IMG/VR virus record: IMGVR_UViG_3300023174_000040
Span: 186,001 to 250,000 of that record
Direction: 5' to 3' (one strand)
Length of the DNA: 64,000 bases
In this document: positions 1,632-50,640 of the stretch, piece after piece
Numbering within the stretch: position 1 is the stretch's first letter
How the letters are laid out: every line of letters begins with the position of its first letter
Position numbers and translations under genes: made by a program
The notes under the pieces: model-generated
What the model was told of the DNA's origin: nothing
What the model saw: the letters and a program-made list of their open reading frames with translations, nothing else
Databases searched by the model: none

Positions 1632-2276
1632 TTCTTTATTTCCGTTCGAAGATAAGACCTTTTCGCCGGTGTTTTTGATGTCGTAGTAAAAAGAATCGGT
1701 GTCTTCTGTTGTCCACCGGTCTGCATTCTCACAAACGAATATTTGTTTATCCACTTTATATTTAGGAATATTGTCGATCTTTAATGGGTTATTAATAAAG
1801 TTGCTATCTCTCCATAGTATTCTATTGTTTGGCTGAAGAGCAAAGTGTCCATTATCAAGTTTGATTAGGTGTGCATTTTTATAATCTTGGGGAGTATCGC
1901 TATAAGAGTTATTTTCCCAATCAAAGGTCATCATGTATGTTCCCCATACTAATGATTTATCTTTTAATATAACTTCACATCTTTTATTAACAAGATAAGT
2001 GAATACTATAACATTTATTTCATTTCCAAAGCAATCCCATAATTCTAATAAATCAAGTCTATATCCTGGGTGGTCTTTTTTATGAACAAGAGCACTTATT
2101 GGAACGTTGGCTCTTTGAGCACCGTTCTCTAACATTATGTGAAATGTTAATGCTCTTGCTGCTGTGCTTCTTGCTGCGAAAACAAGACAATATTCATATT
2201 CATCAAATCCTGATTGATATTCAAAAAGATGTTCTTTTTTTACAAAACAATAAAACGGGTTTATATTAACGTTCAT
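1620..2276 (-). CDS. Conserved phage hypothetical protein
   Basis: 218-aa ORF. The NPFYCFVKKEHL...FHIMLENGA...WDCF...ALQPNNRILW pattern resembles a family I recall from aquatic phages; function unknown. Confidence 0.7.
   Translation of the reverse strand: MNVNINPFYCFVKKEHLFEYQSGFDEYEYCLVFAARSTAARALTFHIMLENGAQRANVPISALVHKKDHPGYRLDLLELWDCFGNEINVIVFTYLVNKRCEVILKDKSLVWGTYMMTFDWENNSYSDTPQDYKNAHLIKLDNGHFALQPNNRILWRDSNFINNPLKIDNIPKYKVDKQIFVCENADRWTTEDTDSFYYDIKNTGEKVLSSNGNKESTI
1635..1665 (+). repeat. Copy 3 (core only) of the conserved element
   Basis: TTTATTTCCGTTCGA-N10-TTTTCG, inside the 3' end of the minus-strand ORF 1620..2276. Confidence 0.6.
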
Positions 2277-2763
2277 GGGTAACTTCTGGGTGATTCTCTA
2301 TTAACCAATTATTAAATGATTCCACTGCTCTTCCAAAGTCTGGACTTGATTTTACTCCTGATGGCAATTGCGGGAGCTGTCTTTTTGTTGGATCAAACTT
2401 ATTAGTGGGAGCTTTAGTTGCTTTTACCTTGCCCCCTATTATTTGAGCTTTTCCCCTTGAAACAACTACATCTTTTCCATTTACTTTTTGCGTACTTGTT
2501 TTCATGGGAACTTTTTTAGCCATATCCAACATTTCTGCTTTTTCGTCTTCAATATCTTGTTCTTCATCTGTGAGTTTGGAAGCTACGGGTTTTTTAATGG
2601 GAGGAGCTGCACTTGCTTTATTTGATATTCCCAAACCTATTCCTGCGAGACTTCCTGCTACCAATGCGCTCCTTAGTAGTTTATTCTTTCCTAATGAGTC
2701 TAAGATTCCTTCGTCTATTATCTCTGGGTGTTTTTCTATTAGCCATTCATTAAATGTTTTCAT
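2266..2763 (-). CDS. Putative internal virion protein (CTS-like N-terminus plus hydrophobic segment)
   Basis: Starts MKTFNEWLIEKHPE; a similar motif ESFNNWLIENHPE recurs at the C-terminus. Confidence 0.7.
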   Translation of the reverse strand: MKTFNEWLIEKHPEIIDEGILDSLGKNKLLRSALVAGSLAGIGLGISNKASAAPPIKKPVASKLTDEEQDIEDEKAEMLDMAKKVPMKTSTQKVNGKDVVVSRGKAQIIGGKVKATKAPTNKFDPTKRQLPQLPSGVKSSPDFGRAVESFNNWLIENHPEVTHER

Positions 2764-2766
2764 GTT

Positions 2767-3060
2767 TTATATTTCTATTTGATATTCTGGATCTTTGACC
2801 ATGCTGTTGTATTTATTAACAAAGAGCTTCAAGTCTTCTTCTGCGTCGTGTTCACTATTAGTGTGACTGTTAAATATTTTTCTCCACTTTGGAACTAATT
2901 GCTTTACATCTTTTTTTAGATCTTCTAATCCTTGTGGGTCGTTTTCTTTGCACCATTCAATTTGCTCCAACACATACATGGCTTCCCCGTATGCTTCATC
3001 TTCTGCCCAACCATCATTGTTATTTTCTTTAATTTCTAACCATTCATTAAATGTTTTCAT
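2767..3060 (-). CDS. Putative internal virion protein (CTS-like N-terminus)
   Basis: Starts MKTFNEWLEIKE; acidic, 97 aa. Confidence 0.7.
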   Translation of the reverse strand: MKTFNEWLEIKENNNDGWAEDEAYGEAMYVLEQIEWCKENDPQGLEDLKKDVKQLVPKWRKIFNSHTNSEHDAEEDLKLFVNKYNSMVKDPEYQIEI

Positions 3061-3088
3061 GTTTTTATATATGAATCAAATAGTTAGA

Positions 3089-3121: not shown

Positions 3122-3134
3122 GTTTTTGTTTTTC

Positions 3135-3163: not shown

Positions 3164-3186
3164 GGTTTCTTAACCTGAGGTATTTT

Positions 3187-3393: not shown

Positions 3394-3409
3394 TAATATA
3401 TAAATTACT

Positions 3410-3775
3410 ATGAAAACATTTAATGAATGGCTCTCCGGTAAGTTAGAAGAAAATCAAAGTGCTGATGGGTTTAGTTTTAAAAATCATCCCATAGCAACTC
3501 AGCAAATTGCTTCGACAGTTGTTAGTCTAGTTCCAATTGATTTTGAACATAGTCCGAGCTACGGAGAGAGAAGTTCTGATTTTGGGTTATTAATCAAGAA
3601 TCAGCATGGTGAGGCTAAAGCTTATCTGAGTCCAAACAAAAGCGTTGCCATGAATTACTACAATGAATTCATATCAGTCTTTAATCATTTAGTCACTCAA
3701 AGTAGTGAGAATGAGGTCGTTATTATGCAACCTCATACACTAGATAAATTACTTGCCCACATTGGCGTTAGATAG
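3410..3775 (+). CDS. Putative internal virion protein (CTS-like N-terminus)
   Basis: Starts MKTFNEWLSGKLEE. Confidence 0.7.
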   Translation: MKTFNEWLSGKLEENQSADGFSFKNHPIATQQIASTVVSLVPIDFEHSPSYGERSSDFGLLIKNQHGEAKAYLSPNKSVAMNYYNEFISVFNHLVTQSSENEVVIMQPHTLDKLLAHIGVR

Positions 3776-3776
3776 T

Positions 3777-9926: not shown

Positions 9927-11213
9927 TTATTTTTTTCTTTTAATAAAAACTCTATTCTCGAGAAATTCAACAAACTTTAAAGCGTCCTCTGCTTGATATT
10001 GAGCACTAGGGTTTGAAGATGATCTAAAAACCTTTATATCATCTTTTATCTTTTCTTTAATTTTTTGTATCAAATCTTTAATGTCTTCTACTGGGTCATT
10101 AGGATCAGAAGATACCATATCAACGTAATAAAAAAACGTGTAATAAGAACCAGGAGCGTATCCTTTTTTGACTTTAAATTCTATTTTTTTAGTACTTGGA
10201 TAATAATTAATGACGAACTTTGTATTATTTTTATAATTCTTTTCTATTATTCCCGGATATTCTTTGTCATATTTAAGGCCATAAGTATTGGATATAGCTT
10301 CCATCTTGCTGTAATTATTTGATAATACAGGCTTTCTTTCATTTTTTTCTGTCTTGAGAAAACTTTTAATTTCTTGAATCACGTCGGATAAATCATTATT
10401 GTTCTCTATTACAAACTGTTTTTTGAATTCATCTTTATATCCATATATTGAAACCCAAACAGTATTAGGATGTTCTTTGGAGTTAGATAATTCTATTGTT
10501 GAATATCTATCTTTATCTCTAAGTGTTATTTCTGTTCTACCTTCACTTTGCCACCCCCTTGATTTTTTCTTAAATAATTGGTAATCAGGAAAGTTTTTAG
10601 CTATAGAATATAATATTTTATAATTACCATCATTAGTTATTAAATCTACAACTCTATACGACTTGGGGTCCAAATAAACAACTTGATTGGGTTCATTGCT
10701 ATGAATTACACCCAACCCAGGATCATATAAAACGTTATACCCAGTCTTTTTAAAGAAGCTGTTCCAGGAAGAGTTTCTGGGTAGTCCTTTTTGATTTCTT
10801 ATTCGTTCCAGAACTCCCCAAAAAAGATGACCAGGAGAATCCATGTTTGACTTATGATAAACTTCATCGCTATCTAAAAGACTTTTATCTATACCCATAT
10901 CAATCAAAAGCTTCTCAGCGGTAATCCTGTCCATGTCAAGATTTAAAACTTTAGCACTTTCGGAAGGCTCAATTAGAAACGCATAAGGGTAACTTGCAAA
11001 CATATTATTTTTAAACAAACCATGACCCAGGACATAATCTTTTGGGAAAACATAAACTCCTATTGGGTCAAAGTGGCTTGGATTTGGATTTAAACTCAAG
11101 AAGTCTGTTTTTGAAAAATGAACACCGGAGTATGGACCTTTTAACTGTTTAACTTTTTCAAATAACGCTGGTGAGGATACTTCGCTTCTTTCAAGCCACG
11201 TTTTAAAACTCAT
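9927..11213 (-). CDS. CTS-bearing protein with putative ADP-ribosyltransferase fold (ART-PolyVal-like)
   Basis: Starts MSFKTWLERSE; motif order VHFS...GVYVFP...YAFLIE...GYNVLYD...NEPNQVVYLDP is typical of ART folds. Confidence 0.45.
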   Translation of the reverse strand: MSFKTWLERSEVSSPALFEKVKQLKGPYSGVHFSKTDFLSLNPNPSHFDPIGVYVFPKDYVLGHGLFKNNMFASYPYAFLIEPSESAKVLNLDMDRITAEKLLIDMGIDKSLLDSDEVYHKSNMDSPGHLFWGVLERIRNQKGLPRNSSWNSFFKKTGYNVLYDPGLGVIHSNEPNQVVYLDPKSYRVVDLITNDGNYKILYSIAKNFPDYQLFKKKSRGWQSEGRTEITLRDKDRYSTIELSNSKEHPNTVWVSIYGYKDEFKKQFVIENNNDLSDVIQEIKSFLKTEKNERKPVLSNNYSKMEAISNTYGLKYDKEYPGIIEKNYKNNTKFVINYYPSTKKIEFKVKKGYAPGSYYTFFYYVDMVSSDPNDPVEDIKDLIQKIKEKIKDDIKVFRSSSNPSAQYQAEDALKFVEFLENRVFIKRKK

Positions 11214-17883: not shown

Positions 17884-18696
17884 TTATGGAATAACCAAAT
17901 CGGCATCGGCCAACACATATGGAATCTCTGTTACAGTATTCGGATTGACGTTGGTTCCAGAGTATGTGTAGGTTATCTTTCTGGCAAATGCCCCAGCAAC
18001 AGCACCGGTGGGATACTCTATTATTTGTGTTATTCTATCGCTGCCGTCAACAGTTAATTTTTGGCAAGTAAACAGTCCAGATGCTCTGCCTGCTATCAAT
18101 TCCCAGTCTTGTTTCATATCGGAAGGCGAGAATCCGGCACTCTCTATGATATCTTGATCTGCAGAATCATTTTCATCAAGAAGAACGAGTTGGCCAGCAG
18201 AATCAGGAAAATTAAATCTATTTTCAATTGTGTGTCTTGCAAAATAAGAAGGCAATTCAGAGACGCCAGCTTTTTTATTGAATCTCAAAGATAGTTCGGC
18301 CCCAGTATTACTTATCCATAACTTTATTTCTCTTGTATTTCTATTTGGTTTAGCAGTAATAACTACAGCGGATCCATTTACATTGGCATAAAACATGCTT
18401 GAGAATGTTTCATCAGAGTTTAATGCATTACAAACTTCACTTGCTGTAGTGGCCGATGAATTTGCTCCCGACACATCAATTGAAAGAGCTGAGTAATTTT
18501 TAAATTCAGTGTCATATGCGTAATTTAATGTCAAAATTTCTTTACCGTCTAAATCCCATGGACCAACATTATAAGTTGATTGAAAATTAGAGCTATTTTG
18601 ATTTGCAGGACATGTGAATGTTAGTGAATATTTCTTATCGTCTAAGGTCCAGTTTCCCCTAAATTCCGAATTAAATAAATTTTGAAAAAAAGACAT
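17884..18696 (-). CDS. Hypothetical, probably structural protein
   Basis: 270-aa ORF rich in beta-strand-like and Ser/Asn/Thr sequence; co-oriented with the LamG gene. Confidence 0.6.
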   Translation of the reverse strand: MSFFQNLFNSEFRGNWTLDDKKYSLTFTCPANQNSSNFQSTYNVGPWDLDGKEILTLNYAYDTEFKNYSALSIDVSGANSSATTASEVCNALNSDETFSSMFYANVNGSAVVITAKPNRNTREIKLWISNTGAELSLRFNKKAGVSELPSYFARHTIENRFNFPDSAGQLVLLDENDSADQDIIESAGFSPSDMKQDWELIAGRASGLFTCQKLTVDGSDRITQIIEYPTGAVAGAFARKITYTYSGTNVNPNTVTEIPYVLADADLVIP

Positions 18697-32398: not shown

Positions 32399-32418
32399 GA
32401 TATACTATATATTATTAG

Positions 32419-32786: not shown

Positions 32787-33230
32787 ATGTTAAATTTTAA
32801 AGATTGGCTTATAAGTGAAGGTTCTAATCCTGGCGGCAAAACTGGTTTGTATCCATTGGGATACGGTGGAATAGGATTATACCCGCCCCAGTGGTACCTC
32901 ACAAGAAGTGCGGATGCAATCTTTTACCTGTCCGTAGACGAAAGAATCTACAATTCAACAGATAAGACATCGTTTGATATAACTCATATACCCGGGGAGT
33001 CAAATACAAAATTAAATAGCGGCGAGTCTGGTTTGTGGAGTATAAGGGGCATAGGTGGTGAATCCACTTCACCAAAAATCAATAAAGATGGATTCTCGGC
33101 AAAATATGGAGAAGGAAAGCCTTGGAGCATAAAGAAGATACCCGGAAAACCTTCTTACACAAAAAACAAAGATTTTGTCCCAGATTCAGGAGACGGCGGC
33201 ATATGGAGCATAAAACATATTAAAAAGTAG
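32787..33230 (+). CDS. CTS-bearing hypothetical protein with internal repeats
   Basis: Starts MLNFKDWLISE; four (W/F)(S/D)IxxIxG repeats. Confidence 0.7.
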   Translation: MLNFKDWLISEGSNPGGKTGLYPLGYGGIGLYPPQWYLTRSADAIFYLSVDERIYNSTDKTSFDITHIPGESNTKLNSGESGLWSIRGIGGESTSPKINKDGFSAKYGEGKPWSIKKIPGKPSYTKNKDFVPDSGDGGIWSIKHIKK

Positions 33231-33755: not shown

Positions 33756-34076
33756 TTACTTGTAAATATTTCCAAATTTAGATCCCTGCATACCGCCGAC
33801 ATCGCCCAATAAATCATCGAGAAGAGCAAGCATCTCGGGGTTTCTTCCTACAAATTGAATCAGTTTTTGATATTTATTTCCTTTTTCACCAAGATTACTG
33901 GAAATCTTAGCCAGGTTTTTATTCATTTGTTGTTTTGAGCGAACCTCAGGAGCAGGTTGTTGTGTATTTTGTCCTGGGGTCACGTCGTTGGAAGAATTGG
34001 TTGCCATGGGTTGTTGAAGTCCAACAGCAGGGGGAGCCATTTCGTTTATCAATTTGTTTAGTTTGTAGAAGTTCAT
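33756..34076 (-). CDS. Hypothetical protein (weak CTS-like start)
   Basis: MNFYKLNKLINE, then a Pro/Gln-rich low-complexity segment. Confidence 0.6.
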   Translation of the reverse strand: MNFYKLNKLINEMAPPAVGLQQPMATNSSNDVTPGQNTQQPAPEVRSKQQMNKNLAKISSNLGEKGNKYQKLIQFVGRNPEMLALLDDLLGDVGGMQGSKFGNIYK

Positions 34077-35328: not shown

Positions 35329-35330
35329 TT

Positions 35331-37616: not shown

Positions 37617-37691
37617 AAATTATATTAGTTACTTATTAAGTATTTTTTAAAGAAAAATACAACTATATATTTTAGATTCTGAAAGGTAAAA

Positions 37692-39014: not shown

Positions 39015-39035
39015 AATTTGAACTATAATTAGTTT

Positions 39036-39776
39036 ATGACTTCTGTGGTAGTTTACATAATAAACGGTAATCTAAATTACCATAAAATGGCTCTTAATAG
39101 CATCAAAATGCTTAGAAAATTCAACAAAAACATAAGAATAATATGTTTTTGCACACATGATGAGACCATGTTTCCAGAAGAATTGATGGTTGAAACAAAG
39201 TATGTGAAGAACATAGACCCAGAATACTTCCCAGCAAACAAACAATATCTAGCCGATTTGGACTTTGACAATATATTTTACATAGATAGTGACACTTTTA
39301 TATTTGATGATATAGAAAAAATAATAAATAAATACCCAGAAGATATTGTGGGCTGTGAGAACAAGTGGGCCTATAGTGCAGACTTTAAATTATTTAAGCC
39401 CATTAATTCAGGCGTGCTATTGTTTAGAAATGGATCTAACAAAAAAATATACAAAGACTTTAATGATAAGCTCAATAAAATAAAAGAAACCCACCCCGAA
39501 CTATGGGTTTGGCTTGAGAGATATAATAAATGGGTGAGGGAAGAATTCCTAATGAGTCAAATAGTTCATGATGATAATATAAATAAAAATTATTTTAAAA
39601 GAAATCATGTTAAGATACCAGAAAATATCAATGACTTTGAATATATGGATGCGATAATATTCCATACATACACACACAATTGGGAAAGATTGCTAAAATT
39701 CAAAAATGTTAAAAGAAAAGTTTTGAGGCCAAAATTCAAATTAAACTCATATATATTTCATCATGAGCTTATTTAA
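39036..39776 (+). CDS. Glycosyltransferase (GT8-like, GT-A fold)
   Basis: FYIDSDT (DxD), INSGVLLF, IFH. Confidence 0.7.
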   Translation: MTSVVVYIINGNLNYHKMALNSIKMLRKFNKNIRIICFCTHDETMFPEELMVETKYVKNIDPEYFPANKQYLADLDFDNIFYIDSDTFIFDDIEKIINKYPEDIVGCENKWAYSADFKLFKPINSGVLLFRNGSNKKIYKDFNDKLNKIKETHPELWVWLERYNKWVREEFLMSQIVHDDNINKNYFKRNHVKIPENINDFEYMDAIIFHTYTHNWERLLKFKNVKRKVLRPKFKLNSYIFHHELI

Positions 39777-42678
39777 AAATTACGTAGAGAGTCAAGAAAA
39801 TCTTGTCGGTGGTCCTGGCATACAATTGCTTAAATCCACATTTGATGGAATGTTCAGCAGAGGAGCCCCAGTAGAATATGATGATACAGGATTTAATAAG
39901 CCTGATTTTATGTCTTTTAAGAGAATAACTAGCGATCCAAAATATCATGAAGACACCATACCCGTTGCAATGGCAAATAATATTTTATCAATATTAAACA
40001 GATATAAAAAGACCCAAGTAACTCATTATGAAGATATCAAGGCAGCAGTTAATAAAGACATAAAAGACTCATTGTCGCTCCATGATCAAGAAGATGACAA
40101 AATAACAATTGATAACAATGCTCCTAAACAATACGGCAAGGTGAAAGTTTTAATTCCCGGAGGCATAGATAAAGCTCTATCGAGGAGAATAGAAGCGATA
40201 ATAGTACAAAAAAAGAATCTCCAAAAAACTTTAAATAAATTTGGAAAACATCAATATGAAGCATGGCGATACTTCAGTCAAGATAAAAACACACTAGATA
40301 CATACTATGTTTCGCCCGAAGTCATTGATGAGATAGTGGAACTAGTAGCGGGTGAGAAAAAGATAGGCGTTAAAAAAATAGGAGCATCGGCCGCAGTTGC
40401 CGCCACGGGAATAAACACCGGATCATCCTCAGATGTTAATGTTATAGGAGTAGAAGAAACCCAGAGATATGGCAAAAGGCTTGCCATACAGTTTAATGTT
40501 CCGTTTGAAAAAAGTAAAGCCTTATTTGATGCGGTTAAGGCAGCAGGACTTTCTCCAAGTGGAATGGCATACGAAAGAAACCCAACAAGATTCTTATTAT
40601 CATTGGATAGAAAGATTCACGACCAAGTAATCAAAAAGTTCAGTGAATTTGGAATAGATGCCAAACCAATAGATGATTTTGTGGAAAAGAACCAATTATC
40701 AGTTCAATCTGCGGACGATCCTTCAGAAGAAGAAAAACCAACAAAAGGATCCGAGAGTGCGCCTACCAGTGAGAGAATAGAGTTTACAGATCCTTCCAAG
40801 GGAAGAGACGATAAACTTCATATAAAAATATTATACACAAGAGTATCTCCTCAACAAAAAGAGTTCCTTAGGGAACTTGTGCAATACACATTTCCAAATT
40901 ACGAATGGGATAGAGACAACTATTCTTATATCGTTAGGGGTAATTTTAAACAATATGTATCTTTTGGTGCAACACTTAAAAAATTCGGTTACATGTTTGA
41001 AATAACAGACAATTACACGCAGAACCCAAATAGTCTTAAACTAATCCTACAAACTAAACTTAAAAATGGCGGAGTCAAAAAGACAAAATACGAAGGGGAA
41101 GTTCCAGAAGGATTAAAAGATAAAATAGAAGAAAAACTACCTGAATCTAAGTTTGAATTATATGATCAGCAAAAAGATGGAGTGACCTTCTTGTACGGCA
41201 GACATCACGCAATACTTGGTGATGAAACAGGATATGGAAAAACTGCAATGCTTATAAGTGCTGCGGAGTTGAAGATGCAAGACACTCCTGGCGCAAAAAC
41301 TCTTGTGATTACATTGAAATCGGTTCAACAGCAGTGGGTAGATGAGATAAAAAATGTTGTAGGAGATAAATCCGAAATCTCAACTGATGCATTGAATCCA
41401 AAGAAGTGGACCGTTCTGTACTACGACAATTTTTCAAGTGGAAAACAAGTGGATAATGTTGTCAAGTCAGTCAGCGGGACAAATTTTGAAATAGCAATAT
41501 TTGATGAACTTCACAAACTAAAACACAGCACGTCCAAAAGAAGCCAGAACATACTCGTCGCAACTCAGAACATACCTTATAAATGGGGCGCCAGCGCAAC
41601 AATAAGTGCAAACAAACCAATGGACGTAAAGAATCAATTGGTTATGATCGGCCACCCACTTGGCTCCATAAAAGAAGGAAAGTTTAAAAAAGATTTTGCG
41701 GGCATGGTGCCCGGTGGTTATGGCGGAAGTTATGTTGAGGGAACATTTAGAGATAAGATCAAAGCCGCCGAGAAACTAAATCGATGGTTAAATCTATCAG
41801 GAGTCTATGTCAGAAGAACAAAGAATGAATTAAGAGAAATGCCCAATCTTGAAGTTAACGCATACACAACTGACATAGACACATCGGAATTTAGTAAGAA
41901 ATTAAAAGAAAAACTCAAGGCTTATAAGGATCCCAATTTAGCAATATCAGAATTAATAGCCTCGAGAGAAATCCTTGCTCATCTAAAAGTGGATTCCACA
42001 GTAGATAAAGCCTTGAAAATAATAAATTCAAATAAAGAAAAATCAGAAAACAATTACGCAGCAAGTAAAGTTGTCATATTTACAAACTTCGTTCAATCCG
42101 GTGAACAAATAAACAACAAGTTATCAGCTAAATTAAAAGAAATTAATCCTAATTTTAAAGTAATAACATATCTTTCTAGTACAAAGAAAGCAGAAAGAGA
42201 AAAGGTTAAAGAACTATTTACAAATGATCCTAATGCAAAAGCACTTGTAATGAGTATGAAAATGGGTGGAACTGGGATAAGTTTTCCCAACGCAGCTCAG
42301 AATATGATCGTTAATGACTTTGATTGGACTCCTGAAAGCTCTGAGCAGAGTGAGGGAAGAATATACAGAATCAACACAAACCACTCAGTTAAGATAGATT
42401 ATACACTAGCACCGGGCCTAGACACCGAAATCTATGAAGCAGTTCAGCGCAAAAGGAAGCTTGCAGAAATTATCCAAAGATACAGAAAAGAATACCAGGA
42501 TGTTCAGGCCGATGAAAAGCTGCTACAGAAGATAATTGATACTCAAGTAGAAGCAAATAAAATAGATGAAGAAATTAAGAATTTAATAGCAAAGGCTGCT
42601 TCCAAATCTATGGAGGAAGCGGTATCATTTAGCGATTATCTTAAAATATTAGAATTGGGATTCAACGCAGACACTTGA
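39763..42678 (+). CDS. SNF2/SWI2-family ATPase (SMARCAL1/HARP-like) with long N-terminal extension
   Basis: LGDETGYGKT, IFDELH, GASAT, GISF, QSEGRIYRIN; starts MSLFKNYVESQE. Confidence 0.9.
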   Translation: MSLFKNYVESQENLVGGPGIQLLKSTFDGMFSRGAPVEYDDTGFNKPDFMSFKRITSDPKYHEDTIPVAMANNILSILNRYKKTQVTHYEDIKAAVNKDIKDSLSLHDQEDDKITIDNNAPKQYGKVKVLIPGGIDKALSRRIEAIIVQKKNLQKTLNKFGKHQYEAWRYFSQDKNTLDTYYVSPEVIDEIVELVAGEKKIGVKKIGASAAVAATGINTGSSSDVNVIGVEETQRYGKRLAIQFNVPFEKSKALFDAVKAAGLSPSGMAYERNPTRFLLSLDRKIHDQVIKKFSEFGIDAKPIDDFVEKNQLSVQSADDPSEEEKPTKGSESAPTSERIEFTDPSKGRDDKLHIKILYTRVSPQQKEFLRELVQYTFPNYEWDRDNYSYIVRGNFKQYVSFGATLKKFGYMFEITDNYTQNPNSLKLILQTKLKNGGVKKTKYEGEVPEGLKDKIEEKLPESKFELYDQQKDGVTFLYGRHHAILGDETGYGKTAMLISAAELKMQDTPGAKTLVITLKSVQQQWVDEIKNVVGDKSEISTDALNPKKWTVLYYDNFSSGKQVDNVVKSVSGTNFEIAIFDELHKLKHSTSKRSQNILVATQNIPYKWGASATISANKPMDVKNQLVMIGHPLGSIKEGKFKKDFAGMVPGGYGGSYVEGTFRDKIKAAEKLNRWLNLSGVYVRRTKNELREMPNLEVNAYTTDIDTSEFSKKLKEKLKAYKDPNLAISELIASREILAHLKVDSTVDKALKIINSNKEKSENNYAASKVVIFTNFVQSGEQINNKLSAKLKEINPNFKVITYLSSTKKAEREKVKELFTNDPNAKALVMSMKMGGTGISFPNAAQNMIVNDFDWTPESSEQSEGRIYRINTNHSVKIDYTLAPGLDTEIYEAVQRKRKLAEIIQRYRKEYQDVQADEKLLQKIIDTQVEANKIDEEIKNLIAKAASKSMEEAVSFSDYLKILELGFNADT

Positions 42679-43477: not shown

Positions 43478-43984
43478 TTAATACCCATTGTAAACTTTAG
43501 AGGAATAATCTCCGGATGCACCACCAAACAACTTAGTTGAGTAGTCTGTTCCTTGTGACCTGACCATTAATTTAATGTTTTCAGGATTCTTTTCATATTG
43601 ATATTTGGCACTCATAGTGAAGAATTTTTTAAGTTCAGCACACATGTATTCAATTATATTTTTTGCACAGTCATCTTCTGTTGCATCTTTTTGTCCCATG
43701 AGATTATTATATATTTTCTCAAAGTCCAGCAGATATGGCTTTCCATAAGGATGAGTATTCGTCTTGTTTTGAACCTTGAATGCTATAGAATTAGCAATAG
43801 GATATACTCTAACTCCTTGAAAATAAGTATCGGGATTAGTTGAAAATACAAAAATATGAGGTTCTTGGTCCGAGTCAAATAGTTTATTTTTTATCTTTTG
43901 ACTCTTCAATAGATCACTTATTATCTTAAGCTTCCTATGAGCCTGCATTTCCGATTGGTTAATATAATCAAAAAATTTATACAT
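43478..43984 (-). CDS. Hypothetical protein (CTS-like start)
   Basis: MYKFFDYINQSE. Confidence 0.65.
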   Translation of the reverse strand: MYKFFDYINQSEMQAHRKLKIISDLLKSQKIKNKLFDSDQEPHIFVFSTNPDTYFQGVRVYPIANSIAFKVQNKTNTHPYGKPYLLDFEKIYNNLMGQKDATEDDCAKNIIEYMCAELKKFFTMSAKYQYEKNPENIKLMVRSQGTDYSTKLFGGASGDYSSKVYNGY

Positions 43985-43994: not shown

Positions 43995-45305
43995 TTAGCA
44001 GTTCCTTAAAATTATTTCAGCTGCACTGGGCACACATCTCTGTATGACTTTCAAGTCTGATGGGTTACCGTTAAAGGGAAGTTCTTTAACAATGACTCCA
44101 GGAAAACTTGCAGCAGCCTGCTTAAGAGTATCTAGTTGAGCTGTCACAAATAAAATTCCATCTATCCTCTCAATGAAGTCGGACTCTCCTTTTTTAGGAA
44201 ATCCATTCTCATCAATCTCCCCTGTTTCATATAAATACTTGATCTTTAAATCTACATACGGAACAACATTTCCATCATCATCTATCATAGCCTCACTGTT
44301 TTCCGACTGTATTGTTCTTACTGACAATTTACCGTCCGCATAAGCGGTGCTTAGACAGCTTCCGAGATCTAAACCTACAAAATAAACGGTTCCATCTACT
44401 CCCACTACGTTTATGAGGAAAGATCTTTGCTTGAAATTATCTGCAATAGCTTCCATGATAACTCTTCTTCTTAGAACATCTCTCTCTTCTGGGCTGCCTT
44501 CTTCTAGCCTCTTGAGTTCGGGATCCTCCAAAAATCTTTCTGGGTCGTCTTCCCTTAAGGACCATTTTCCTAAATCTATCATTCCCCATTTTTCATTGAA
44601 TCTTGTTGATATCTTTATTGAATATGTTCTTTCATTGTAAATGATATCTTCGGAGTTTCCTCCACTGCCAACTTGGGCCGCACCTAATAATGAGGCCAAA
44701 TATTTTCTGTGAAGGTCACTCTTCATGCCCAGTGTTCCCTTCAGCTTAATAAATACATTTGTTAAATCAGAATAACTCTGAAGTGAGGTGAAGATGTGAT
44801 TGACAACTGACATCGAGGGATTATTGTTATCCAATTCCTGTCTGATAGATTTTCTTATATCCTTACCAGCTTTTTCTATATTAGAATTTTGTCTTAAAAA
44901 AAGAATCTGTAAATTGTCTTCAACAAACTTTCTTGGATAAGCCTCTAAATCATAATCCCTGATTTTATGAATATCATTTAATAAAAGACTTGTGTCGCCT
45001 TTAACTAGATTTTTAAAATAGCTTATTTTCCAAGTTTCAAAATCTTCTGATTCCTCTTGTTCTTCTGGGATGTCGGGAGATTGTGGTTCTTGCGATAAAT
45101 CTTGCGGAGAATCTTGTTTTGGGAGTTCTATCTCTGTCTCCTCTGGGGCCCCATCTGTATTTTGGTCCTGTGGTGGTTCTTCGGAGGTGTTGTTTTGCAT
45201 CACCACCTGATTGCCGCCAGTAGCATCGGAAGGAGGCTGTCCTCCTGCGGCTTCGCCTGGATTTCCAAGTTCTTCATTAAACCAATTTAAAGTATTAATT
45301 TTCAT
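43995..45305 (-). CDS. Hypothetical, probably virion/head-associated protein
   Basis: 436 aa; MKINTLNWFNEE followed by an acidic Pro/Glu-rich tract. Confidence 0.7.
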   Translation of the reverse strand: MKINTLNWFNEELGNPGEAAGGQPPSDATGGNQVVMQNNTSEEPPQDQNTDGAPEETEIELPKQDSPQDLSQEPQSPDIPEEQEESEDFETWKISYFKNLVKGDTSLLLNDIHKIRDYDLEAYPRKFVEDNLQILFLRQNSNIEKAGKDIRKSIRQELDNNNPSMSVVNHIFTSLQSYSDLTNVFIKLKGTLGMKSDLHRKYLASLLGAAQVGSGGNSEDIIYNERTYSIKISTRFNEKWGMIDLGKWSLREDDPERFLEDPELKRLEEGSPEERDVLRRRVIMEAIADNFKQRSFLINVVGVDGTVYFVGLDLGSCLSTAYADGKLSVRTIQSENSEAMIDDDGNVVPYVDLKIKYLYETGEIDENGFPKKGESDFIERIDGILFVTAQLDTLKQAAASFPGVIVKELPFNGNPSDLKVIQRCVPSAAEIILRNC

Positions 45306-46138: not shown

Positions 46139-47344
46139 ATGGGAAAATTTCAAGATTACGTTTTATACAAAGAGAACAACTACAAAGAGAACAATATTCC
46201 GGTAGTTTCAAAAGTTAAATTGGCTAGGAATCCAGGAGTAGAAGATTTCCAACCATTCGTAATCGATAAAGACAACCACCCCAGTTTAAGATTGCTTATA
46301 AAAGCTTTCGAAAATAGCCCACAAATAGGTGTTGGTTACACCACCATGGATAAAACAGATGGTGAGGTTGAACCAAAACTTAAAAAGAAAGTCGTCTACT
46401 TAACAGGTGGGGCAGTTCGTGATCATCTAAAAGGAAAGACCCCGAGAAACTATGATCTTGCAACAGATGCCACATCAAGCGAAATTAAATTAATTTTAAA
46501 GGGAAATGGTTTTGAGGAAACTCAGACTCCGAGAAGTAACAAGAGTTTCTTTGCCAGTAGGATGGATGATAAAAATAAGCCCGTAGAATTCACAGTTGTT
46601 ATTAACGGAGAAAACTTTGAATTATCTCCTTTGTCAAAATCCATTAAGAATAGGAATTTAAATGTTGATGGATTTTCAGCAACATCAAGCTTAGAAGACG
46701 ATGCAGCATCAAGAGACTTTACAATAAATGCAATGTATATTCCACTTAAAAATAGTGAAGGAGAAAACACAGAACTACTTGATGTTTATGGTGGTGCTCA
46801 TCATCTTAAAAATGGTCAAATAATCTCTATCGGGAAGTTCTCAAAAAGAGTTGAAGATGACCCAATGACAGCACATAGATATATAAGAATGCAAGCCAGA
46901 TACGGAAATGAAGACATCCCTGAAGATCACATCGAATCTATGGGAAAAATAAACGATCTAAATAAAAACTATAAAAGGGAATACATTCTTGGTCTCGAGA
47001 ATCCCGAAATAAATGACAGAAAATATTTGGATATGTACAAAAACACAGGTCTTTTAAATACAGTTTATCCTTTAGATAATTTAGCTGTGGACGACGTGCC
47101 AGAAAAAGCTTACAATGATAGATTTTTAACTTCTGCTTGGTTGATGAAAGATAAAGCAATAGAACAAGTTAAATTTGCTTTACTATCAGCGGGGTGGGAA
47201 TCAAGAGAAGTAGAAGATATCGCACATCTTATCAGCATGTATCAAGCAGAAAGAAATAATTACCAGCAGGTTTCAACTCCTTGCGGACTTTCTGATAACA
47301 AAGTTAATAAGTGGAAAAAGATATATTCAACATCAGCCTGGTGA
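46139..47344 (+). CDS. Divergent class II tRNA-nucleotidyltransferase paralog with altered catalytic motifs and CTS-like N-terminus
   Basis: GGAVRD present, but DxD reads NYD, RRD reads SRD(FTINA) and EDxxR reads DDPMT; starts MGKFQDYVLYKE. Confidence 0.8.
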   Translation: MGKFQDYVLYKENNYKENNIPVVSKVKLARNPGVEDFQPFVIDKDNHPSLRLLIKAFENSPQIGVGYTTMDKTDGEVEPKLKKKVVYLTGGAVRDHLKGKTPRNYDLATDATSSEIKLILKGNGFEETQTPRSNKSFFASRMDDKNKPVEFTVVINGENFELSPLSKSIKNRNLNVDGFSATSSLEDDAASRDFTINAMYIPLKNSEGENTELLDVYGGAHHLKNGQIISIGKFSKRVEDDPMTAHRYIRMQARYGNEDIPEDHIESMGKINDLNKNYKREYILGLENPEINDRKYLDMYKNTGLLNTVYPLDNLAVDDVPEKAYNDRFLTSAWLMKDKAIEQVKFALLSAGWESREVEDIAHLISMYQAERNNYQQVSTPCGLSDNKVNKWKKIYSTSAW

Positions 47345-48196: not shown

Positions 48197-48238
48197 TATT
48201 TTTCCTTTTTTGTATTATAACAATTAATATATTTTATT

Positions 48239-49930
48239 TCAAGATTCTTTTCTTAATTCTGCCGAGTAGTGTTCGAATCTATTGTGTTCGGTTGGTGTCA
48301 TGAGCAAAAGTCCACCTTGAATATTACCTTTTTTAGTTTCTTGGTAAATATAACTCATCCAAGTTTGTTCGTATGAATGAGCCCAAGTAGTTTCTAAAAA
48401 CATTTTTTTGTTTCCTTCTCTGGAGACTACTTGGGGCCAATTGCAATAGTAAACTTCTCCATTTGTATATGGAACTCCTCGATGACTTTTTATGTTATTA
48501 TAAACAGTCTTGGGAGCATTTGGATCGGTTCCTAATTGAGGAAGCTTTTTATTATTTGGCCAATACTTTTCTCTGACATCTTGGGACACGTTATACCAAC
48601 TCCATTGAGTTCCATTGTCTCCAAAAAACTCAGTATAGTTTAATTTTAAAAAATCAAAACTTTCTTTGTTTGCTATTTCCATTGACTTAGAATAAAGATT
48701 CTCTGTTATTCTATTGAAGCCATTTTTACAAAGAGGTTCATTTTTATTTGAATAGAAGAACATATCATCTTCGAAAAACCAATGAAAATCAAATTCGTTT
48801 TGTTCCGCATGATCTGCTATGAATTGTCGGCCACCACATATCCCCAAGTTATCTTTTTTAATATGCTCGAAATTATATTCTTCACATAGTTTGATGTATT
48901 CATCATTCTTCGACAAGTCTGTTGAGTTATTGAGAAGAAATCTTTTCTTGGGTTTTATAAGAAAATCAGAGTCGTATGCTTCCATGCTTTTTAATAATGT
49001 TCTAAATTGATTGGGGCTGTTAAAAGTTATTACGTAAAGCGCAGTGTTATCTGTATCTGATTGACAATTTAATTTATTTTCTTTTACCTTCTCGTTTGTG
49101 AATTCTTTAAGATTCTCAAAGAAAGGATAAACTAAACCGTTTCCCGGTATTTCGTATCTATGAATCAAAGCAGGGTGCCTATGGCATAGTATTGTAAATA
49201 AACACTCATCTGCGCCCATATTCCCCTCTCTGAGGGTTGATTCCATAACCCCATAATAAAGGCTATTAATTTGAGATACTAGTTCTTTTCTTCCGCCAAA
49301 GAATCCCCCTCTTGCAACATAATCTACATAATTAATACCGCAATATTTTGCCATAGCATTTCTTTCAAAGCCATGTATTTCATCGTTAGCGGTATATGGA
49401 TATGTTATGTGCACAAACTTCTTTTGAATTTTACAATAATTATCAAGATTATCGAGAACCTTATCATGTGTAAAAGTTCCCTGGTGGACTGTATTTGTCA
49501 ATCCTCCATCTATCCAAAAGAAATAATCAGATTTAAATGGATTGTAAATGGACGAATCATTTAACATGAACATTTTTGTGAACATCATTGGATTGTAAAA
49601 TTCCAATGCCGCCTGAGGTGATTCTCTAAGCCAACCCGCTCTAGATAGCCATTCCTCATTTTTTCTTATTTCTTGTATTTTATCAAAGAAAGGATTCCAA
49701 GTTTTAAAGTCTTCATTTTCTTTAAAATATATTCTTGTTGGCTTATCCTTCCTTATGTCCAAAACTTCCTGCTCTAGGAATTTTGGAATCCAAATGCACA
49801 TTTGAGCATCAACTTCCAACATCTCAAAAAATCTGGCCTTGTAGTCGCTAAAGTTTCTTTGTGCCCAGCCGTCTAAGCTTTCTCGATTAAGATCCCAAAG
49901 ACCTGTGACAAGGGTAATATTTTTATTCAT
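48239..49930 (-). CDS. HtrL/YibB (WlaTC)-like glycosyltransferase fused to a second GT-like domain
   Basis: ITLVTGLWD...K.FML...FFWIDGG...GGFFGG...DE; C-terminal FFEDD domain. Confidence 0.7.
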   Translation of the reverse strand: MNKNITLVTGLWDLNRESLDGWAQRNFSDYKARFFEMLEVDAQMCIWIPKFLEQEVLDIRKDKPTRIYFKENEDFKTWNPFFDKIQEIRKNEEWLSRAGWLRESPQAALEFYNPMMFTKMFMLNDSSIYNPFKSDYFFWIDGGLTNTVHQGTFTHDKVLDNLDNYCKIQKKFVHITYPYTANDEIHGFERNAMAKYCGINYVDYVARGGFFGGRKELVSQINSLYYGVMESTLREGNMGADECLFTILCHRHPALIHRYEIPGNGLVYPFFENLKEFTNEKVKENKLNCQSDTDNTALYVITFNSPNQFRTLLKSMEAYDSDFLIKPKKRFLLNNSTDLSKNDEYIKLCEEYNFEHIKKDNLGICGGRQFIADHAEQNEFDFHWFFEDDMFFYSNKNEPLCKNGFNRITENLYSKSMEIANKESFDFLKLNYTEFFGDNGTQWSWYNVSQDVREKYWPNNKKLPQLGTDPNAPKTVYNNIKSHRGVPYTNGEVYYCNWPQVVSREGNKKMFLETTWAHSYEQTWMSYIYQETKKGNIQGGLLLMTPTEHNRFEHYSAELRKES

Positions 49931-49971
49931 GATTAATCTTAATATAGATTATTCTGAATAAAAATTATCGT

Positions 49972-50640
49972 TTATGGTTTACCCGGAGCTTTGTTATTCC
50001 ATTGACCACTTTGGAATTTTGCCATGGAGTCAGAAACTGGTGCTGGCACTGCCACAGCGGCTGGAACACTGATTGTAATCCCTGACTTTTTATTTTTAAC
50101 TAGCTGTTGTCCCACTATTATTGCGTTTGGTTTATACTTAACGGATTTGTCTATTTTAAGCTCAGAATAAATTTTTTGAATAAGAGATTCAATGCTACCT
50201 ATAGTGGCTGGGTCACCTTGTATATGGACATGTAAGGACAATTCTTGTGGAAGAGATTTAATACTAGATTGTAACTTTCTTTCTTCTACAAGTCTGTCAT
50301 ATGTATTTTGTTCGATAAGAACGGCTGCCTCTTTAATATTGAAGAGTTGCTGGTGTCCTTGGGAGGTATCTACATCATCAAAATTGTATGATGGGGCCGA
50401 TCCTCTACTGCACGATTTGCCTCCGCAAGCACCATATTTCAAGGGATTAACAATTGTGTTTTTAATACCACCAACAGTTTTTTGTCCACGACCTACTTTC
50501 TGACCTCGGTAAGCATCGATCCAATCGTTGTCTCTTCCTTGTAGGGTATTGGCGGTTAGACCGGCCGCAGCGCCCAAACCGGTTGCAATCTGATTTAAGA
50601 AGGATTCGTTTGCTTCAATCCAATCAATGAATTTTTTCAT
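49972..50640 (-). CDS. CTS-bearing hypothetical protein
   Basis: MKKFIDWIEANE followed by a glycine-zipper-like segment, IATGLGAAAGLTA. Confidence 0.7.
   Translation of the reverse strand: MKKFIDWIEANESFLNQIATGLGAAAGLTANTLQGRDNDWIDAYRGQKVGRGQKTVGGIKNTIVNPLKYGACGGKSCSRGSAPSYNFDDVDTSQGHQQLFNIKEAAVLIEQNTYDRLVEERKLQSSIKSLPQELSLHVHIQGDPATIGSIESLIQKIYSELKIDKSVKYKPNAIIVGQQLVKNKKSGITISVPAAVAVPAPVSDSMAKFQSGQWNNKAPGKP

What the first reader, a model, noticed from the sequence alone, without database searches (positions are those of the whole stretch)
2266..50640. T4-type capsid-targeting-sequence-like N-termini on about 14 unrelated proteins: a predicted injected cargo set
Seen: otherwise unrelated ORFs begin with the same short motif. 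These are MKTFNEWLIE (2763-), MKTFNEWLEIKE (3060-), MKTFNEWLSGKLEE (3410+), MSFKTWLERSE (11213-), MKFKNWLLKEE (19546+), MNFKDFINES (23944-), MNFKLWLVES (32398-), MLNFKDWLISE (32787+), MSLFKNYVES (39763+), MYKFFDYINQSE (43984-), MGKFQDYVLYKE (46139+) and MKKFIDWIEANE (50640-), with weaker cases at 34076- and 45305-. Established: the T4 internal proteins carry N-terminal capsid targeting sequences (IPII/IPIII MKTYQEFIAE, IPI MKTFKEF...) that the prohead protease gp21 removes after (I/L)xE. Inference: this phage has attached the tag to enzymes (CCA, HD, ART-like, SNF2, zincin-like), so they are packaged and injected with the DNA. The domain set overlaps that of large polyvalent proteins, but here it is split into separately tagged genes.
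Basis: partly seen in the sequence, partly recalled or inferred. Interest (0 to 1): 0.85.

Follow-up and report, generated by a model that had tools for sequence, protein, structure and literature searches.

The report
T4-type capsid-targeting tags on many proteins
About a fifth of the genes in this stretch of an uncultivated huge phage start with the same 10-12 residue tag as the phage T4 proteins that are packed into the head and injected, so the phage's likely injected enzyme set (tRNA-repair enzymes, a helicase and many unknowns) can be read from its sequence.

Summary
The motif is essentially confined to residue 3-4 after Met1 (Poisson p about 3e-23).

The window comes from a 323-kb contig of an uncultivated huge phage. 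About 39 kb downstream, the same contig encodes a T4-type head module: an S77/gp21-like prohead protease with the catalytic His and Ser, a Glu-rich scaffold-like protein, and a gp23-like capsid protein.

The tag is conserved across the clade. A 595-kb relative has roughly 20-40 tagged proteins, and 80 head-module loci have 77 hits against 1.1 expected. A profile built from these tags ranks T4's ipI, ipII and ipIII as the top 3 of 145 T4 ORFs. In one cargo family, 101 of 101 orthologs have Glu at the tag/mature junction and 96 have L/I/F/M at P3, which is the T4 gp21 rule.

Cargo calls:
- Confirmed: two CCA/poly(A)-type nucleotidyltransferases, an HD hydrolase, an SNF2 helicase.
- Not supported: "ART-like".
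- Inconclusive: "zincin-like".

Packaging, cleavage and injection remain inferred, not shown. This is a new variant of a known kind.

The parts
2266..2763 (-). 165-aa tagged protein, MKTFNEWLIE|KHPE. It also carries a second tag-like copy near its C-end.
   Evidence: The C-terminal copy is conserved in the 188-aa homolog of L004. No Pfam or PHROG family.
2767..3060 (-). 97-aa acidic tagged protein, MKTFNEWLEIKE.
   Evidence: Identical in relatives L003 and L004. No family hit.
3410..3775 (+). 121-aa tagged protein, MKTFNEWLSGKLEE.
   Evidence: No family hit.
9927..11213 (-). 428-aa tagged protein of unknown function, MSFKTWLERSE|V.
   Evidence: Of 52 homologs, nearly all full-length ones start with the tag followed by x-[NS]-E. 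AF2 model: mean pLDDT 86.7, with residues 1-7 below 50, so the tag lies outside the fold. No significant PDB fold match. Matches unnamed viral models in BFVD.
17884..18696 (-). 270-aa tagged protein, MSFFQNLFNSE.
   Evidence: Its ortholog in LR756511 (40% identity) starts MFFQNPFGEEF.
19546..20778 (+). 410-aa CCA-adding / poly(A)-polymerase-family nucleotidyltransferase, MKFKNWLLKEE. An upstream in-frame ATG lies at 19528.
   Evidence: Pfam PolyA_pol E = 2.6e-22, domain starting at residue 41. NCBIfam CCA tRNA nucleotidyltransferase E = 2.8e-36, below the equivalog cut-off. Homologs in other phages align only from residue 20-41 onward.
23123..23944 (-). 273-aa tagged protein, MNFKDFINE|SPV. 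Conserved clade family with invariant H120-R-x-x-H124.
   Evidence: 191 homologs. In 101 of 101 parseable orthologs Glu precedes the conserved mature start; P3 is L/I/F/M in 96; the propeptide is 9-12 aa. AF2 pLDDT 91.6, with residues 1-5 below 50. Foldseek best hit E = 0.14, not significant.
31580..32398 (-). 272-aa HD-type phosphohydrolase, MNFKLWLVE|SSL.
   Evidence: Invariant H26, H34, H80-D81, H110, H149 and D188 in 26 homologs, with the tag and a junction Glu conserved. Pfam HD E = 0.073. PDB profile best hit is the Cas3 HD domain, E = 0.068.
32787..33230 (+). 147-aa tagged protein, MLNFKDWLISE|G, followed by a GLYPLGYGGIGLYP motif.
   Evidence: Paralogs in LR756511 are also tagged. The module is fused to the 273-aa family in P0089 and P0117.
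33756..34076 (-). 106-aa probable member with a weak tag, MNFYKLNKLINE|MAPP.
   Evidence: The junction L-I-N-E|M matches the junction type of the 273-aa family. It scores below the profile threshold.
39763..42678 (+). 971-aa tagged SNF2-family helicase, MSLFKNYVE|SQE. The N-terminal 470 aa have no known domain.
   Evidence: Pfam SNF2-rel_dom E = 2.2e-11 and Helicase_C E = 1.4e-12. The N-terminal half has no family.
43478..43984 (-). 168-aa tagged protein, MYKFFDYINQSE.
   Evidence: Its ortholog in LR756511 (33% identity) starts MLEFKEFIDKKE.
43995..45305 (-). 436-aa conserved protein with a doubtful tag, MKINTLNWFNEE, followed by an acidic low-complexity stretch.
   Evidence: Its ortholog in LR756511 (45% identity) starts MTDRINLEDWLDQ. 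It scores 9.1 on the first scoring matrix.
46139..47344 (+). 401-aa second CCA / poly(A)-polymerase-family nucleotidyltransferase, MGKFQDYVLYKE.
   Evidence: Pfam PolyA_pol E = 8.2e-20, domain starting at residue 86. Its ortholog in LR756511 is tagged (MRTTFLEFMGLKE) and lies next to a tagged HAD_SAK_1 RNA-repair protein.
49972..50640 (-). 222-aa tagged protein, MKKFIDWIEANE|S, transcribed divergently from the baseplate module.
   Evidence: The gene at the equivalent position in LR756511 is a tagged 125-aa protein, MKTFAEWMEERE.

Best explanation
The shared N-terminus is a capsid-targeting sequence (CTS) of the phage T4 type.

Proposed mechanism:
1. The tag is a short amphipathic helix with hydrophobic residues at i, i+3 and i+4 (F, W/Y/F, L/I/V). 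This helix is inferred to dock the newly made protein onto the Glu-rich scaffolding core while the prohead assembles.
2. Once the gp23-like shell has closed, the phage's gp21-like (S77) serine protease cuts after a Glu a few residues beyond the helix, with a hydrophobic residue or N/S just before it. This frees the mature protein inside the head.
3. The cargo then leaves with the DNA at infection and acts before any phage gene is expressed.

In this phage the cargo is not small basic internal proteins. It is a broad set of enzymes and unknown proteins: two CCA-type nucleotidyltransferases and an HD hydrolase (an RNA/tRNA-repair theme, reinforced by a tagged HAD 'Swiss-army-knife' RNA-repair protein in a relative), an SNF2 helicase, and about ten proteins of unknown function.

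Shown here: the tag, its position, its conservation, its match to the T4 CTS, and the presence of the T4-type protease, scaffold-like protein and capsid protein in the same genome.

Inferred: docking to the scaffold, cleavage, packaging and injection.
For: 1. Positional enrichment. In the window, 12 of 23 strict matches sit at residue 3-4 (p about 3e-23). A scoring matrix trained only on the window finds 18 N-terminal hits in the independent 595-kb genome LR756511 against 0.39 expected. In 80 head-module loci from IMG/VR there are 77 hits against 1.1 expected.

2. The tagged proteins are unrelated beyond the tag. Orthologs at 33-45% identity keep a tag even though its sequence has drifted.

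3. The window's own contig has the T4-type head module. L107 (contig 275,407-295,967 of JGI 3300023174 Ga0214921_10000024) encodes Peptidase_S77, a 298-aa protein and Gp23 in T4 order. The protease matches T4 gp21 structure 5JBL at E = 1.7e-17. It keeps the His and Ser that read Ala in the 5JBL chain but His and Ser in wild-type T4.

4. Match to the T4 CTS. T4 ipII and ipIII start MKTYQEFIAE and ipI starts MKTFKEF. The clade consensus is M-K-T-F-N-E-W-L-E-E. A BLOSUM-averaged profile of the 52 tags ranks ipI, ipII and ipIII as the top 3 of 145 ORFs across 100 kb of T4, scoring 12.5-12.7 against 7.8 for the next.

5. Junction. In the 273-aa family, P1 is Glu in 101 of 101 orthologs and P3 is L/I/F/M in 96, while P2 varies. 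This holds even where the linker length varies. The capsid-protein site that aligns with T4 gp23 LTE|A is [MFIVY]-N-E in 80 relatives.

6. The 298-aa protein between protease and capsid protein is 17% Glu. It has 12 [LI]xE sites, the 4th densest of 121 genes, resembling T4 gp22.

7. AlphaFold models of two cargo proteins leave residues 1-5 and 1-7 at pLDDT below 50, outside the folded domain.

8. More tagged genes flank the head module.

9. Literature. T4 CTSs are 10-20 residue propeptides that target proteins to the prohead core. They are removed by gp21, which cuts after Glu (PMC5694885, PMC3012670).
Against: - There is no physical evidence. The phage is uncultivated, and no virion proteome or N-terminal mass spectrometry exists for any relative in the collections searched.
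- Only about half of the tags (27 of 52) carry a [LIVMF]-x-E within 13 residues. In the 428-aa family, P3 before the conserved x-N-E is variable. The cleavage rule is therefore not uniform.
- The scaffold-like protein shows no detectable sequence similarity to T4 gp22, so its role rests on gene position and composition.
- T4 Alt, a known packaged protein, is not recognised by the profile (rank 34 of 145). The profile captures the internal-protein type of CTS only.
- A matrix without substitution-based pseudocounts does not rank the T4 internal proteins first.
- Cargo of up to about 1,000 aa and roughly 20-40 species per genome is well beyond what has been shown for T4.
Confidence: 0.72

Rival explanations
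1. The tag is a docking or sorting peptide for something other than the head. Candidates are a shared chaperone or assembly hub, the tail or baseplate, a membrane site, or a degron that times destruction of these proteins by the S77 protease or a host protease.
For: Many tagged genes in the window lie among tail-fibre, baseplate and glycosyltransferase genes rather than head genes. One tagged gene is divergent from the baseplate operon in both genomes. The cleavage motif is not uniform. No packaging data exist.
Against: The profile specifically recovers T4's head-internal proteins. The junction Glu with hydrophobic P3 matches the specificity of the gp21 family, whose known substrates are prohead components. 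The same hydrophobic-N-E site type sits at the predicted capsid-protein maturation site. Tagged genes also flank the head module.
Confidence: 0.15
2. The conserved 5' gene ends are mainly DNA-level recombination handles that let gene cassettes be swapped, as proposed for T-even internal-protein loci. In this reading the peptide itself has little function.
For: The three MKTFNEW genes share 21 identical nucleotides and lie next to one another. The gene at the position of 2266-2763 differs in length and content between 98%-identical relatives.
Against: Outside that trio, the tags use different codons for the same residue classes. Within orthologous families at 33-70% identity, the amino-acid pattern (F, aromatic, aliphatic, Glu) is kept while the nucleotides and neighbouring residues drift.
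Confidence: 0.05
3. The motif reflects a translation-initiation constraint, such as A/U-rich, unstructured first codons on leaderless or near-leaderless mRNAs.
For: A TATATA[AT] promoter-like motif often lies only 4-10 nt upstream of tagged ATGs, and Shine-Dalgarno sequences are often missing there.
Against: The most conserved positions include Trp (TGG) and Glu, and follow a helical i/i+3/i+4 hydrophobic pattern, which A/U richness does not explain. Most genes carrying the same upstream motif are untagged (23 of 35).
Confidence: 0.03

Closest known systems
Phage T4 internal proteins IPI, IPII and IPIII with their capsid-targeting sequence, processed by prohead protease gp21
   Same: The propeptide is N-terminal and about 10-12 residues long. 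The consensus is near-identical (T4 MKTYQEFIAE / MKTFKEF against clade M-K-T-F-N-E-W-L-E-E). The tag ends at a Glu, often with L/I at P3. It is attached to otherwise unrelated proteins. The genome encodes gp21-, gp23- and gp20-type head genes.
   Different: T4 has three small, basic, very abundant internal proteins. Here roughly 15-20% of the genes in a 110-kb stretch carry the tag, including enzymes of 270-1,076 aa. The genome is 323-595 kb, and its capsid protein is only about 33% identical to gp23. Part of the tags do not fit the strict (L/I)-x-E rule. No gp22, gp67 or gp68 homologs were detected by sequence.
Ejection / inner-body proteins of phiKZ-like giant phages (phiKZ, 201phi2-1, SPN3US)
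   Same: Large phages that pack dozens of proteins, enzymes included, into the head. A gp21-related protease cleaves after Glu (PMC5694885).
   Different: In those phages the propeptides are mostly over 100 residues and have no shared short consensus. The motif is S/A/G-x-E or A-x-E. Here the tag is short and shared, and P3 is hydrophobic.
Phage P1 Dar antirestriction system (DarB helicase-methyltransferase packed in the head)
   Same: A large helicase-containing protein is delivered with the DNA to act before phage gene expression. N-terminal regions direct head incorporation (PMC9024508 appears in the CTS literature search; its text was not read). The tagged SNF2 protein at 39763-42678 would be the analogue.
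   Different: No sequence relationship was tested or found. P1 uses ordered protein-protein dependencies, not a common short cleavable tag (from my own knowledge).
Polyvalent proteins of phages and conjugative elements (Iyer et al. 2017)
   Same: An injected arsenal combining helicase, nucleotide-processing and RNA-targeting or RNA-repair domains (PMC7824862).
   Different: Those are single giant multidomain polypeptides. Here each domain is a separate gene with its own tag. The only Pfam LPD hit in the window is a sub-threshold LPD38 match on the untagged 1,843-aa protein.
Encapsulin cargo-loading peptides
   Same: A short peptide on diverse enzymes directs them into an HK97-fold shell (from my own knowledge).
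   Different: Those peptides are usually C-terminal and are not cleaved. The compartment is not a virion and nothing is injected.

Membership tests
T4-type capsid-targeting sequence (CTS) system | A short (10-20 aa) propeptide at the extreme N-terminus of otherwise unrelated proteins | tested here: met
   Tags start at Met1 and run 9-12 aa to the junction Glu. The proteins are unrelated beyond residue 20. The motif is absent from internal positions.
T4-type capsid-targeting sequence (CTS) system | Sequence resembles the T4 internal-protein CTS (MKTYQEFIAE / MKTFKEF) | tested here: met
   A profile of 52 clade tags ranks ipI, ipII and ipIII as the top 3 of 145 T4 ORFs. A stricter matrix without substitution pseudocounts does not. 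T4 Alt is not recognised.
T4-type capsid-targeting sequence (CTS) system | The propeptide ends at a gp21-type site: cleavage after Glu with L/I at P3 | tested here: inconclusive
   Met in the 273-aa family (P1 Glu in 101 of 101; P3 L/I/F/M in 96 of 101) and at the predicted capsid-protein site. Only 27 of 52 tags have [LIVMF]-x-E nearby, and P3 varies in the 428-aa family. Actual cleavage was not observed.
T4-type capsid-targeting sequence (CTS) system | The genome encodes a gp21-family (Peptidase S77) prohead protease with its catalytic residues | tested here: met
   L107 13917-14606: Pfam PF03420. 5JBL match at E = 1.7e-17. GELDHP and SSRG are conserved with T4 gp21.
T4-type capsid-targeting sequence (CTS) system | A gp22-type scaffolding core to which the CTS binds | tested here: inconclusive
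   A 298-aa protein with 17% Glu and dense [LI]xE sites lies between the protease and capsid-protein genes, as gp22 does. phmmer with T4 gp22, gp67 and gp68 finds nothing.
T4-type capsid-targeting sequence (CTS) system | Tagged proteins are physically in the head, processed, and ejected with the DNA | not testable with these tools
   The phage is uncultivated and no proteome is available.
T4 internal proteins (IPI/II/III) as a protein class | Small, basic, highly abundant DNA-associated proteins | tested here: not met
   Cargo here ranges from 97 to 971 aa, is often acidic or neutral, and includes enzymes.
phiKZ-type ejection proteins | Long (over 100 aa) propeptides cleaved at S/A/G-x-E | tested here: not met
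   Propeptides are 9-12 aa with hydrophobic P3. Compared with the description in PMC5694885.
Polyvalent proteins | One giant polypeptide joining many effector domains | tested here: not met
   Each domain is a separate gene. There is only a sub-threshold LPD38 hit, on an untagged protein.

The most novel reading that the evidence does not exclude
A cosmopolitan, uncultivated clade of huge T4-superfamily phages (388 capsid-protein relatives in IMG/VR) uses a sequence-readable CTS to pre-load its capsids with dozens of different enzymes. These include a ready-made tRNA/RNA-repair kit (CCA-adding enzymes, an HD hydrolase, an HAD 'Swiss-army-knife' protein) and a helicase. If so, the injected proteome of uncultivated phages can be predicted from metagenomes alone. 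It would also mean that first-minute counter-defence in huge phages is carried by protein rather than by early genes.
Probability: 0.5. Interest if true: 0.8.

Novelty: new variant of a known kind. Interest (0 to 1): 0.72.

Why it matters
In T4 the CTS is known for three small internal proteins, and it is used as an engineering handle. Here the same tag marks roughly 15-20% of the genes over 110 kb of a 323-kb phage. It marks tens of proteins in a 595-kb relative, and hits are spread over 44 of 80 related head loci.

If the tag works as it does in T4, three things follow:
- It gives a direct, sequence-based list of what huge phages inject. For uncultivated phages this is otherwise unknowable.
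- It points to pre-packaged tRNA repair and helicase activities as immediate counter-defence.
- It supplies many conserved proteins of unknown function with a predicted place and time of action.

In the searchable full-text library, none of the 21 papers containing 'capsid targeting sequence' concerns metagenomic huge phages or this clade.

Tried and rejected
- Chance: rejected.
- Paralogy of the tagged genes: rejected, 50 components from 52 proteins.
- DNA-level conservation as the cause: rejected except for the MKTFNEW trio.
- Megablast of 24 kb against phage GenBank records: no match.
- PHROGs on ten tagged proteins: one family of unknown function only.
- Pfam at E up to 5 on the unknown cargo: nothing usable apart from a weak HD hit.
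- NCBIfam: only the CCA/PcnB and helicase families.
- PDB profile searches for the 273-aa and 428-aa families: nothing.
- Foldseek against PDB: the best hit for the 273-aa model is a zinc-protease toxin chain at E = 0.14 (TM 0.27). The 428-aa model gives PUR/Whirly-like and clamp-like hits at E of 5e-3 or worse with TM below 0.2. Neither supports a call.
- The first log-odds matrix (no substitution pseudocounts) ranked the T4 internal proteins only 3rd, 5th and 6th of 70. It was replaced by a BLOSUM-averaged profile.
- Closest cultured phage by capsid protein (Microcystis phage Mel-JY01, 34% identity): no strong tags in its first 50 kb, only one CTS-like start on a gene between protease and capsid protein. 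It is therefore not a ready experimental proxy.
- tblastn of the 273-aa protein against phage records: no match.
- The portal gene of the window's own genome was not located within the 110 kb examined.

Full report
WHAT IS THERE

The window has 35% G+C and is densely coding on both strands, with 65 genes by a simple longest-ORF call.

A strict form of the motif, F..[WYF][LIV].{0,5}E, occurs 23 times in 20,149 residues. Twelve of those are at residue 3 or 4 after the initiator Met. From the internal rate, about 0.07 would be expected there (Poisson p = 3.5e-23).

Scanning every ATG-started ORF of at least 25 codons in six frames (720 in all) with a tag profile gives ten hits. All ten are starts of real long genes.

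- Of the two 'weak' cases, 34076(-) is probably real, because it ends L-I-N-E|M like other families. 45305(-) is doubtful.
- With the first 20 residues trimmed, 52 tagged proteins from this genome and a relative form 50 BLAST components. Only the two CCA-type enzymes are paralogs.
- The three MKTFNEW genes share 21 identical nucleotides. The other tags encode the same residue classes with different codons.

WHERE THE WINDOW COMES FROM

The 428-aa tagged protein retrieves a 323,267-bp IMG/VR contig at 100% identity. That contig is the same as JGI 3300023174 Ga0214921_10000024, and the window is about contig 186,001-250,000.

There is no nucleotide match in GenBank phages. By protein, the nearest record is the 595-kb 'uncultured phage' LR756511.1, with 44% identity in the baseplate hub and 75% in the capsid protein. 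The nearest cultured phages have capsid proteins only about 34% identical.

The window itself holds tail-fibre-like beta-propeller proteins, glycosyl- and methyltransferases, and a baseplate module with gp5/VgrG-like and gp25-like genes.

THE HEAD MACHINERY IS T4-TYPE AND LIES IN THE SAME GENOME

I walked along the contig with four look-ups. This reached, about 39 kb to the right of the window, a block in T4 gene order (L107):
- a 595-aa protein;
- Peptidase_S77, the gp21 family (229 aa);
- a 298-aa protein;
- Gp23, the major capsid protein (474 aa).

The large terminase lies about 13 kb before this block.

The protease matches the T4 gp21 crystal structure 5JBL at E = 1.7e-17. It retains the His of GELDHP and the Ser of SSRG. 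In the 5JBL chain these positions read Ala, while wild-type T4 has His and Ser, which I take to be an inactivated catalytic pair.

The 298-aa protein has no detectable similarity to T4 gp22. It is 17% Glu and carries 12 [LI]xE sites, the fourth highest density among 121 genes, as expected for a scaffold that a Glu-specific protease degrades.

LR756511 has the same module plus a gp20-like portal. Its capsid protein has 388 relatives in IMG/VR, so this is a large, widespread clade.

THE TAG IS CLADE-WIDE AND EQUALS THE T4 CTS

- A matrix built only from the window's 13 tags finds 18 N-terminal hits in LR756511 against 0.39 expected. A looser pattern lists about 45.
- In 80 independent head-module loci there are 77 N-terminal hits against 1.1 expected, spread over 44 loci.
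- In the 110 kb of the window's genome now in hand, 20-22 of 121 genes are tagged, including six that flank the head module.
- Orthologs shared with LR756511 at 33-45% identity keep a tag although its sequence has drifted.
- The capsid protein, protease and scaffold families are never tagged.

The consensus is M-[KL]-[TN]-F-[NK]-[ED]-W-L-[EN]-[ES]-K-E. Translated from the T4 record, ipII and ipIII begin MKTYQEFIAE and ipI begins MKTFKEF.

A BLOSUM-averaged profile of the 52 clade tags, applied to 145 ORFs in 100 kb of T4, puts ipI, ipII and ipIII in ranks 1-3. They score 12.5-12.7 and the next ORF scores 7.8. An arbitrary set of three ORFs would fill the top three ranks with probability 1 in 497,420. 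T4 Alt is not recognised (rank 34), so the profile captures the internal-protein type of CTS specifically.

THE JUNCTION LOOKS LIKE A GP21-TYPE SITE

The 273-aa protein (23123-23944) has 191 homologs.
- In 101 of 101 orthologs where the junction can be parsed, the residue before the conserved mature start (M-P-I...) is Glu.
- P3 is L/I/F/M in 96 of them, and P2 varies.
- The propeptide is 9-12 residues.
- Where extra residues are inserted, a new hydrophobic-x-E precedes the mature start.
- Gene callers in other metagenomes often started this protein at that Met.

The HD family shows the same kind of Glu junction. The 428-aa family has a conserved x-[NS]-E with variable P3.

In the capsid protein, the position aligned with the T4 gp23 cleavage site (LTE|A) reads [MFIVY]-N-E|[VITA] in all 80 relatives. 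This is the same tripeptide type as F-I-N-E|S, L-I-N-E|M and W-L-L-N-E|M in the tags.

Overall, only 27 of 52 tags have [LIVMF]-x-E close by, so the rule is not uniform.

AlphaFold models of the 273-aa and 428-aa proteins are confident overall (pLDDT 91.6 and 86.7). They leave residues 1-5 and 1-7 below 50, so the tag is a free extension rather than part of the fold.

CARGO

- Two tagged proteins are CCA-adding / poly(A)-polymerase-family nucleotidyltransferases (Pfam E = 2.6e-22 and 8.2e-20; NCBIfam CCA tRNA nucleotidyltransferase E = 2.8e-36). Their catalytic domains start at residues 41 and 86, and homologs in other phages align only from residue 20 or later.
- 31580-32398 has the invariant H..HD..H..D pattern of HD phosphohydrolases, though database scores are weak.
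- 39763-42678 is an SNF2-family helicase with an unassigned 470-aa N-terminal half.
- In LR756511, the tagged CCA ortholog sits next to a tagged HAD_SAK_1 protein, the HAD domain of 'Swiss-army-knife' RNA-repair proteins (E = 1.6e-15).

Part of the tagged set therefore has an RNA/tRNA-repair theme. The other ten or so proteins have no assignable function.

The 'zincin-like' call rests only on an invariant H-R-x-x-H and a non-significant fold hit.

MECHANISM AND RIVALS

The best-supported reading (confidence 0.72) is a T4-type CTS. An amphipathic N-terminal helix docks the protein onto the scaffolding core. The S77 protease removes the helix after the junction Glu. The mature proteins remain in the head and enter the cell with the DNA.

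The rivals are:
- A docking peptide for another structure, or a degron (0.15). This is weakened by the specific match to T4 head-internal proteins and by the shared site type with the capsid protein.
- A DNA-level recombination handle (0.05). This is plausible only for the MKTFNEW trio.
- A translation-initiation constraint (0.03). This is not compatible with conserved Trp and Glu or with the helical periodicity.

COMPARISON AND NOVELTY

This behaves like the T4 internal-protein/CTS system and meets the sequence-level criteria for it. It differs in scale (tens of cargo species), in the nature of the cargo (enzymes up to about 1,000 aa) and in host genome (huge phages with distant gp23 and gp21 homologs).

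It differs from phiKZ-type ejection proteins, which have long propeptides and S/A/G-x-E sites (PMC5694885). It differs from polyvalent proteins, which are single giant polypeptides (PMC7824862).

Twenty-one papers in the searchable library contain the phrase 'capsid targeting sequence'. None of them deals with metagenomic huge phages or this clade. The only giant-phage papers among them concern cultured SPN3US, which has long propeptides. I therefore rate the finding a new variant of a known kind.

The main limit is that everything about packaging, cleavage and injection is inferred from sequence.

Noticed in passing
Upstream of many genes, e.g. window 3061-3075, 3395-3409, 32399-32415, 39745-39762, 50641-50655: A TATATA[AT] motif is about 13-fold enriched in the 50 nt upstream of genes. 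It often lies only 4-10 nt before the ATG and no Shine-Dalgarno sequence is present, so it looks like a phage promoter that would give leaderless or near-leaderless mRNAs. It is present at 12 of 21 tagged genes and 23 of 100 untagged genes (Fisher p = 0.003).
   Followed up: partly
Window 2266-2763 (-), C-terminal about 20 codons (about 2266-2330): The 165-aa tagged protein carries a second tag-like sequence at its C-end (ESFNNWLIENHPEV). This mirrors its N-terminus (KTFNEWLIEKHPEI). The copy is conserved in the 188-aa homolog of the 98%-identical relative L004. Its function is unknown.
   Followed up: partly
Window 32787-33230 (+); LR756511 71311-71550, 502604-502846, 588507-588749; proteins P0089, P0117: A GLYPLGYGGIGLYP-type motif directly follows the tag in a small protein family with several paralogs. 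In two metagenomic proteins this module is fused in front of the 273-aa family, which suggests a functional link.
   Followed up: no
LR756511 580680-582206 and 582920-583582 (L017 34681-36207 and 36921-37583): In the 595-kb relative, a tagged CCA-type nucleotidyltransferase and a tagged HAD_SAK_1 ('Swiss-army-knife' RNA-repair HAD) protein are neighbours. This reinforces an RNA-repair theme among the tagged proteins.
   Followed up: partly
L108 19938-21122 (LR756502.1) and L109 19941-21113 (LR745206.1): CCA-enzyme homologs in two other huge-phage genomes (642 and 635 kb, 29-31% G+C) start MIITKYAKFLES and MILKKYKMFLES. This is a similar Y-x-x-F-L-E-S set a few residues further from Met1, so related tags may exist in other huge-phage clades.
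   Followed up: no
Window 340-412 (+): A tRNA-Gln (anticodon TTG) gene lies at the left edge of the window.
   Followed up: no
Window 63089-63439 (+), inside the 1,103-aa baseplate protein that starts at 62915: A segment of about 119 aa of this baseplate protein is 31% identical (E = 1.6e-13) to residues 149-258 of the LR756511 capsid protein. A surface or insertion domain appears to be shared between head and baseplate proteins.
   Followed up: no
Window 21654-22592 (-): A 312-aa protein with a signal-peptide-like N-terminus and a caspase (Peptidase_C14) domain (E = 1.7e-6) lies among the tail-fibre and cargo genes.
   Followed up: no
Window 34108-39776 and 47333-49930: Clusters of glycosyltransferase (GT2, GT34-like, HtrL/YibB-like) and methyltransferase genes are interleaved with Mtd_N-type tail-fibre genes. 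This may indicate virion or host-surface glycan modification.
   Followed up: no
Right of the window, L099 18432-20124 (window coordinates about 78,100-79,800): A GIY-YIG/NUMOD3 homing-endonuclease gene abuts an actin-like 'Volactin' gene. The length of the called actin-like gene differs between near-identical contigs: 334, 351 and 355 aa.
   Followed up: no
Window 19528 versus 19546 (+): The first in-frame ATG of the CCA-type gene lies 6 codons upstream of the tag's Met (MLSKNN-MKFKNWLL), and this is conserved in relatives. The position of the tag argues that 19546 is the real start.
   Followed up: partly
L110 22429-23595 (Microcystis phage Mel-JY01): In the closest cultured phage by capsid protein, the only CTS-like start in the first 50 kb is MYEYVEYILE. 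It is on a 388-aa gene between the prohead protease and capsid-protein genes.
   Followed up: no
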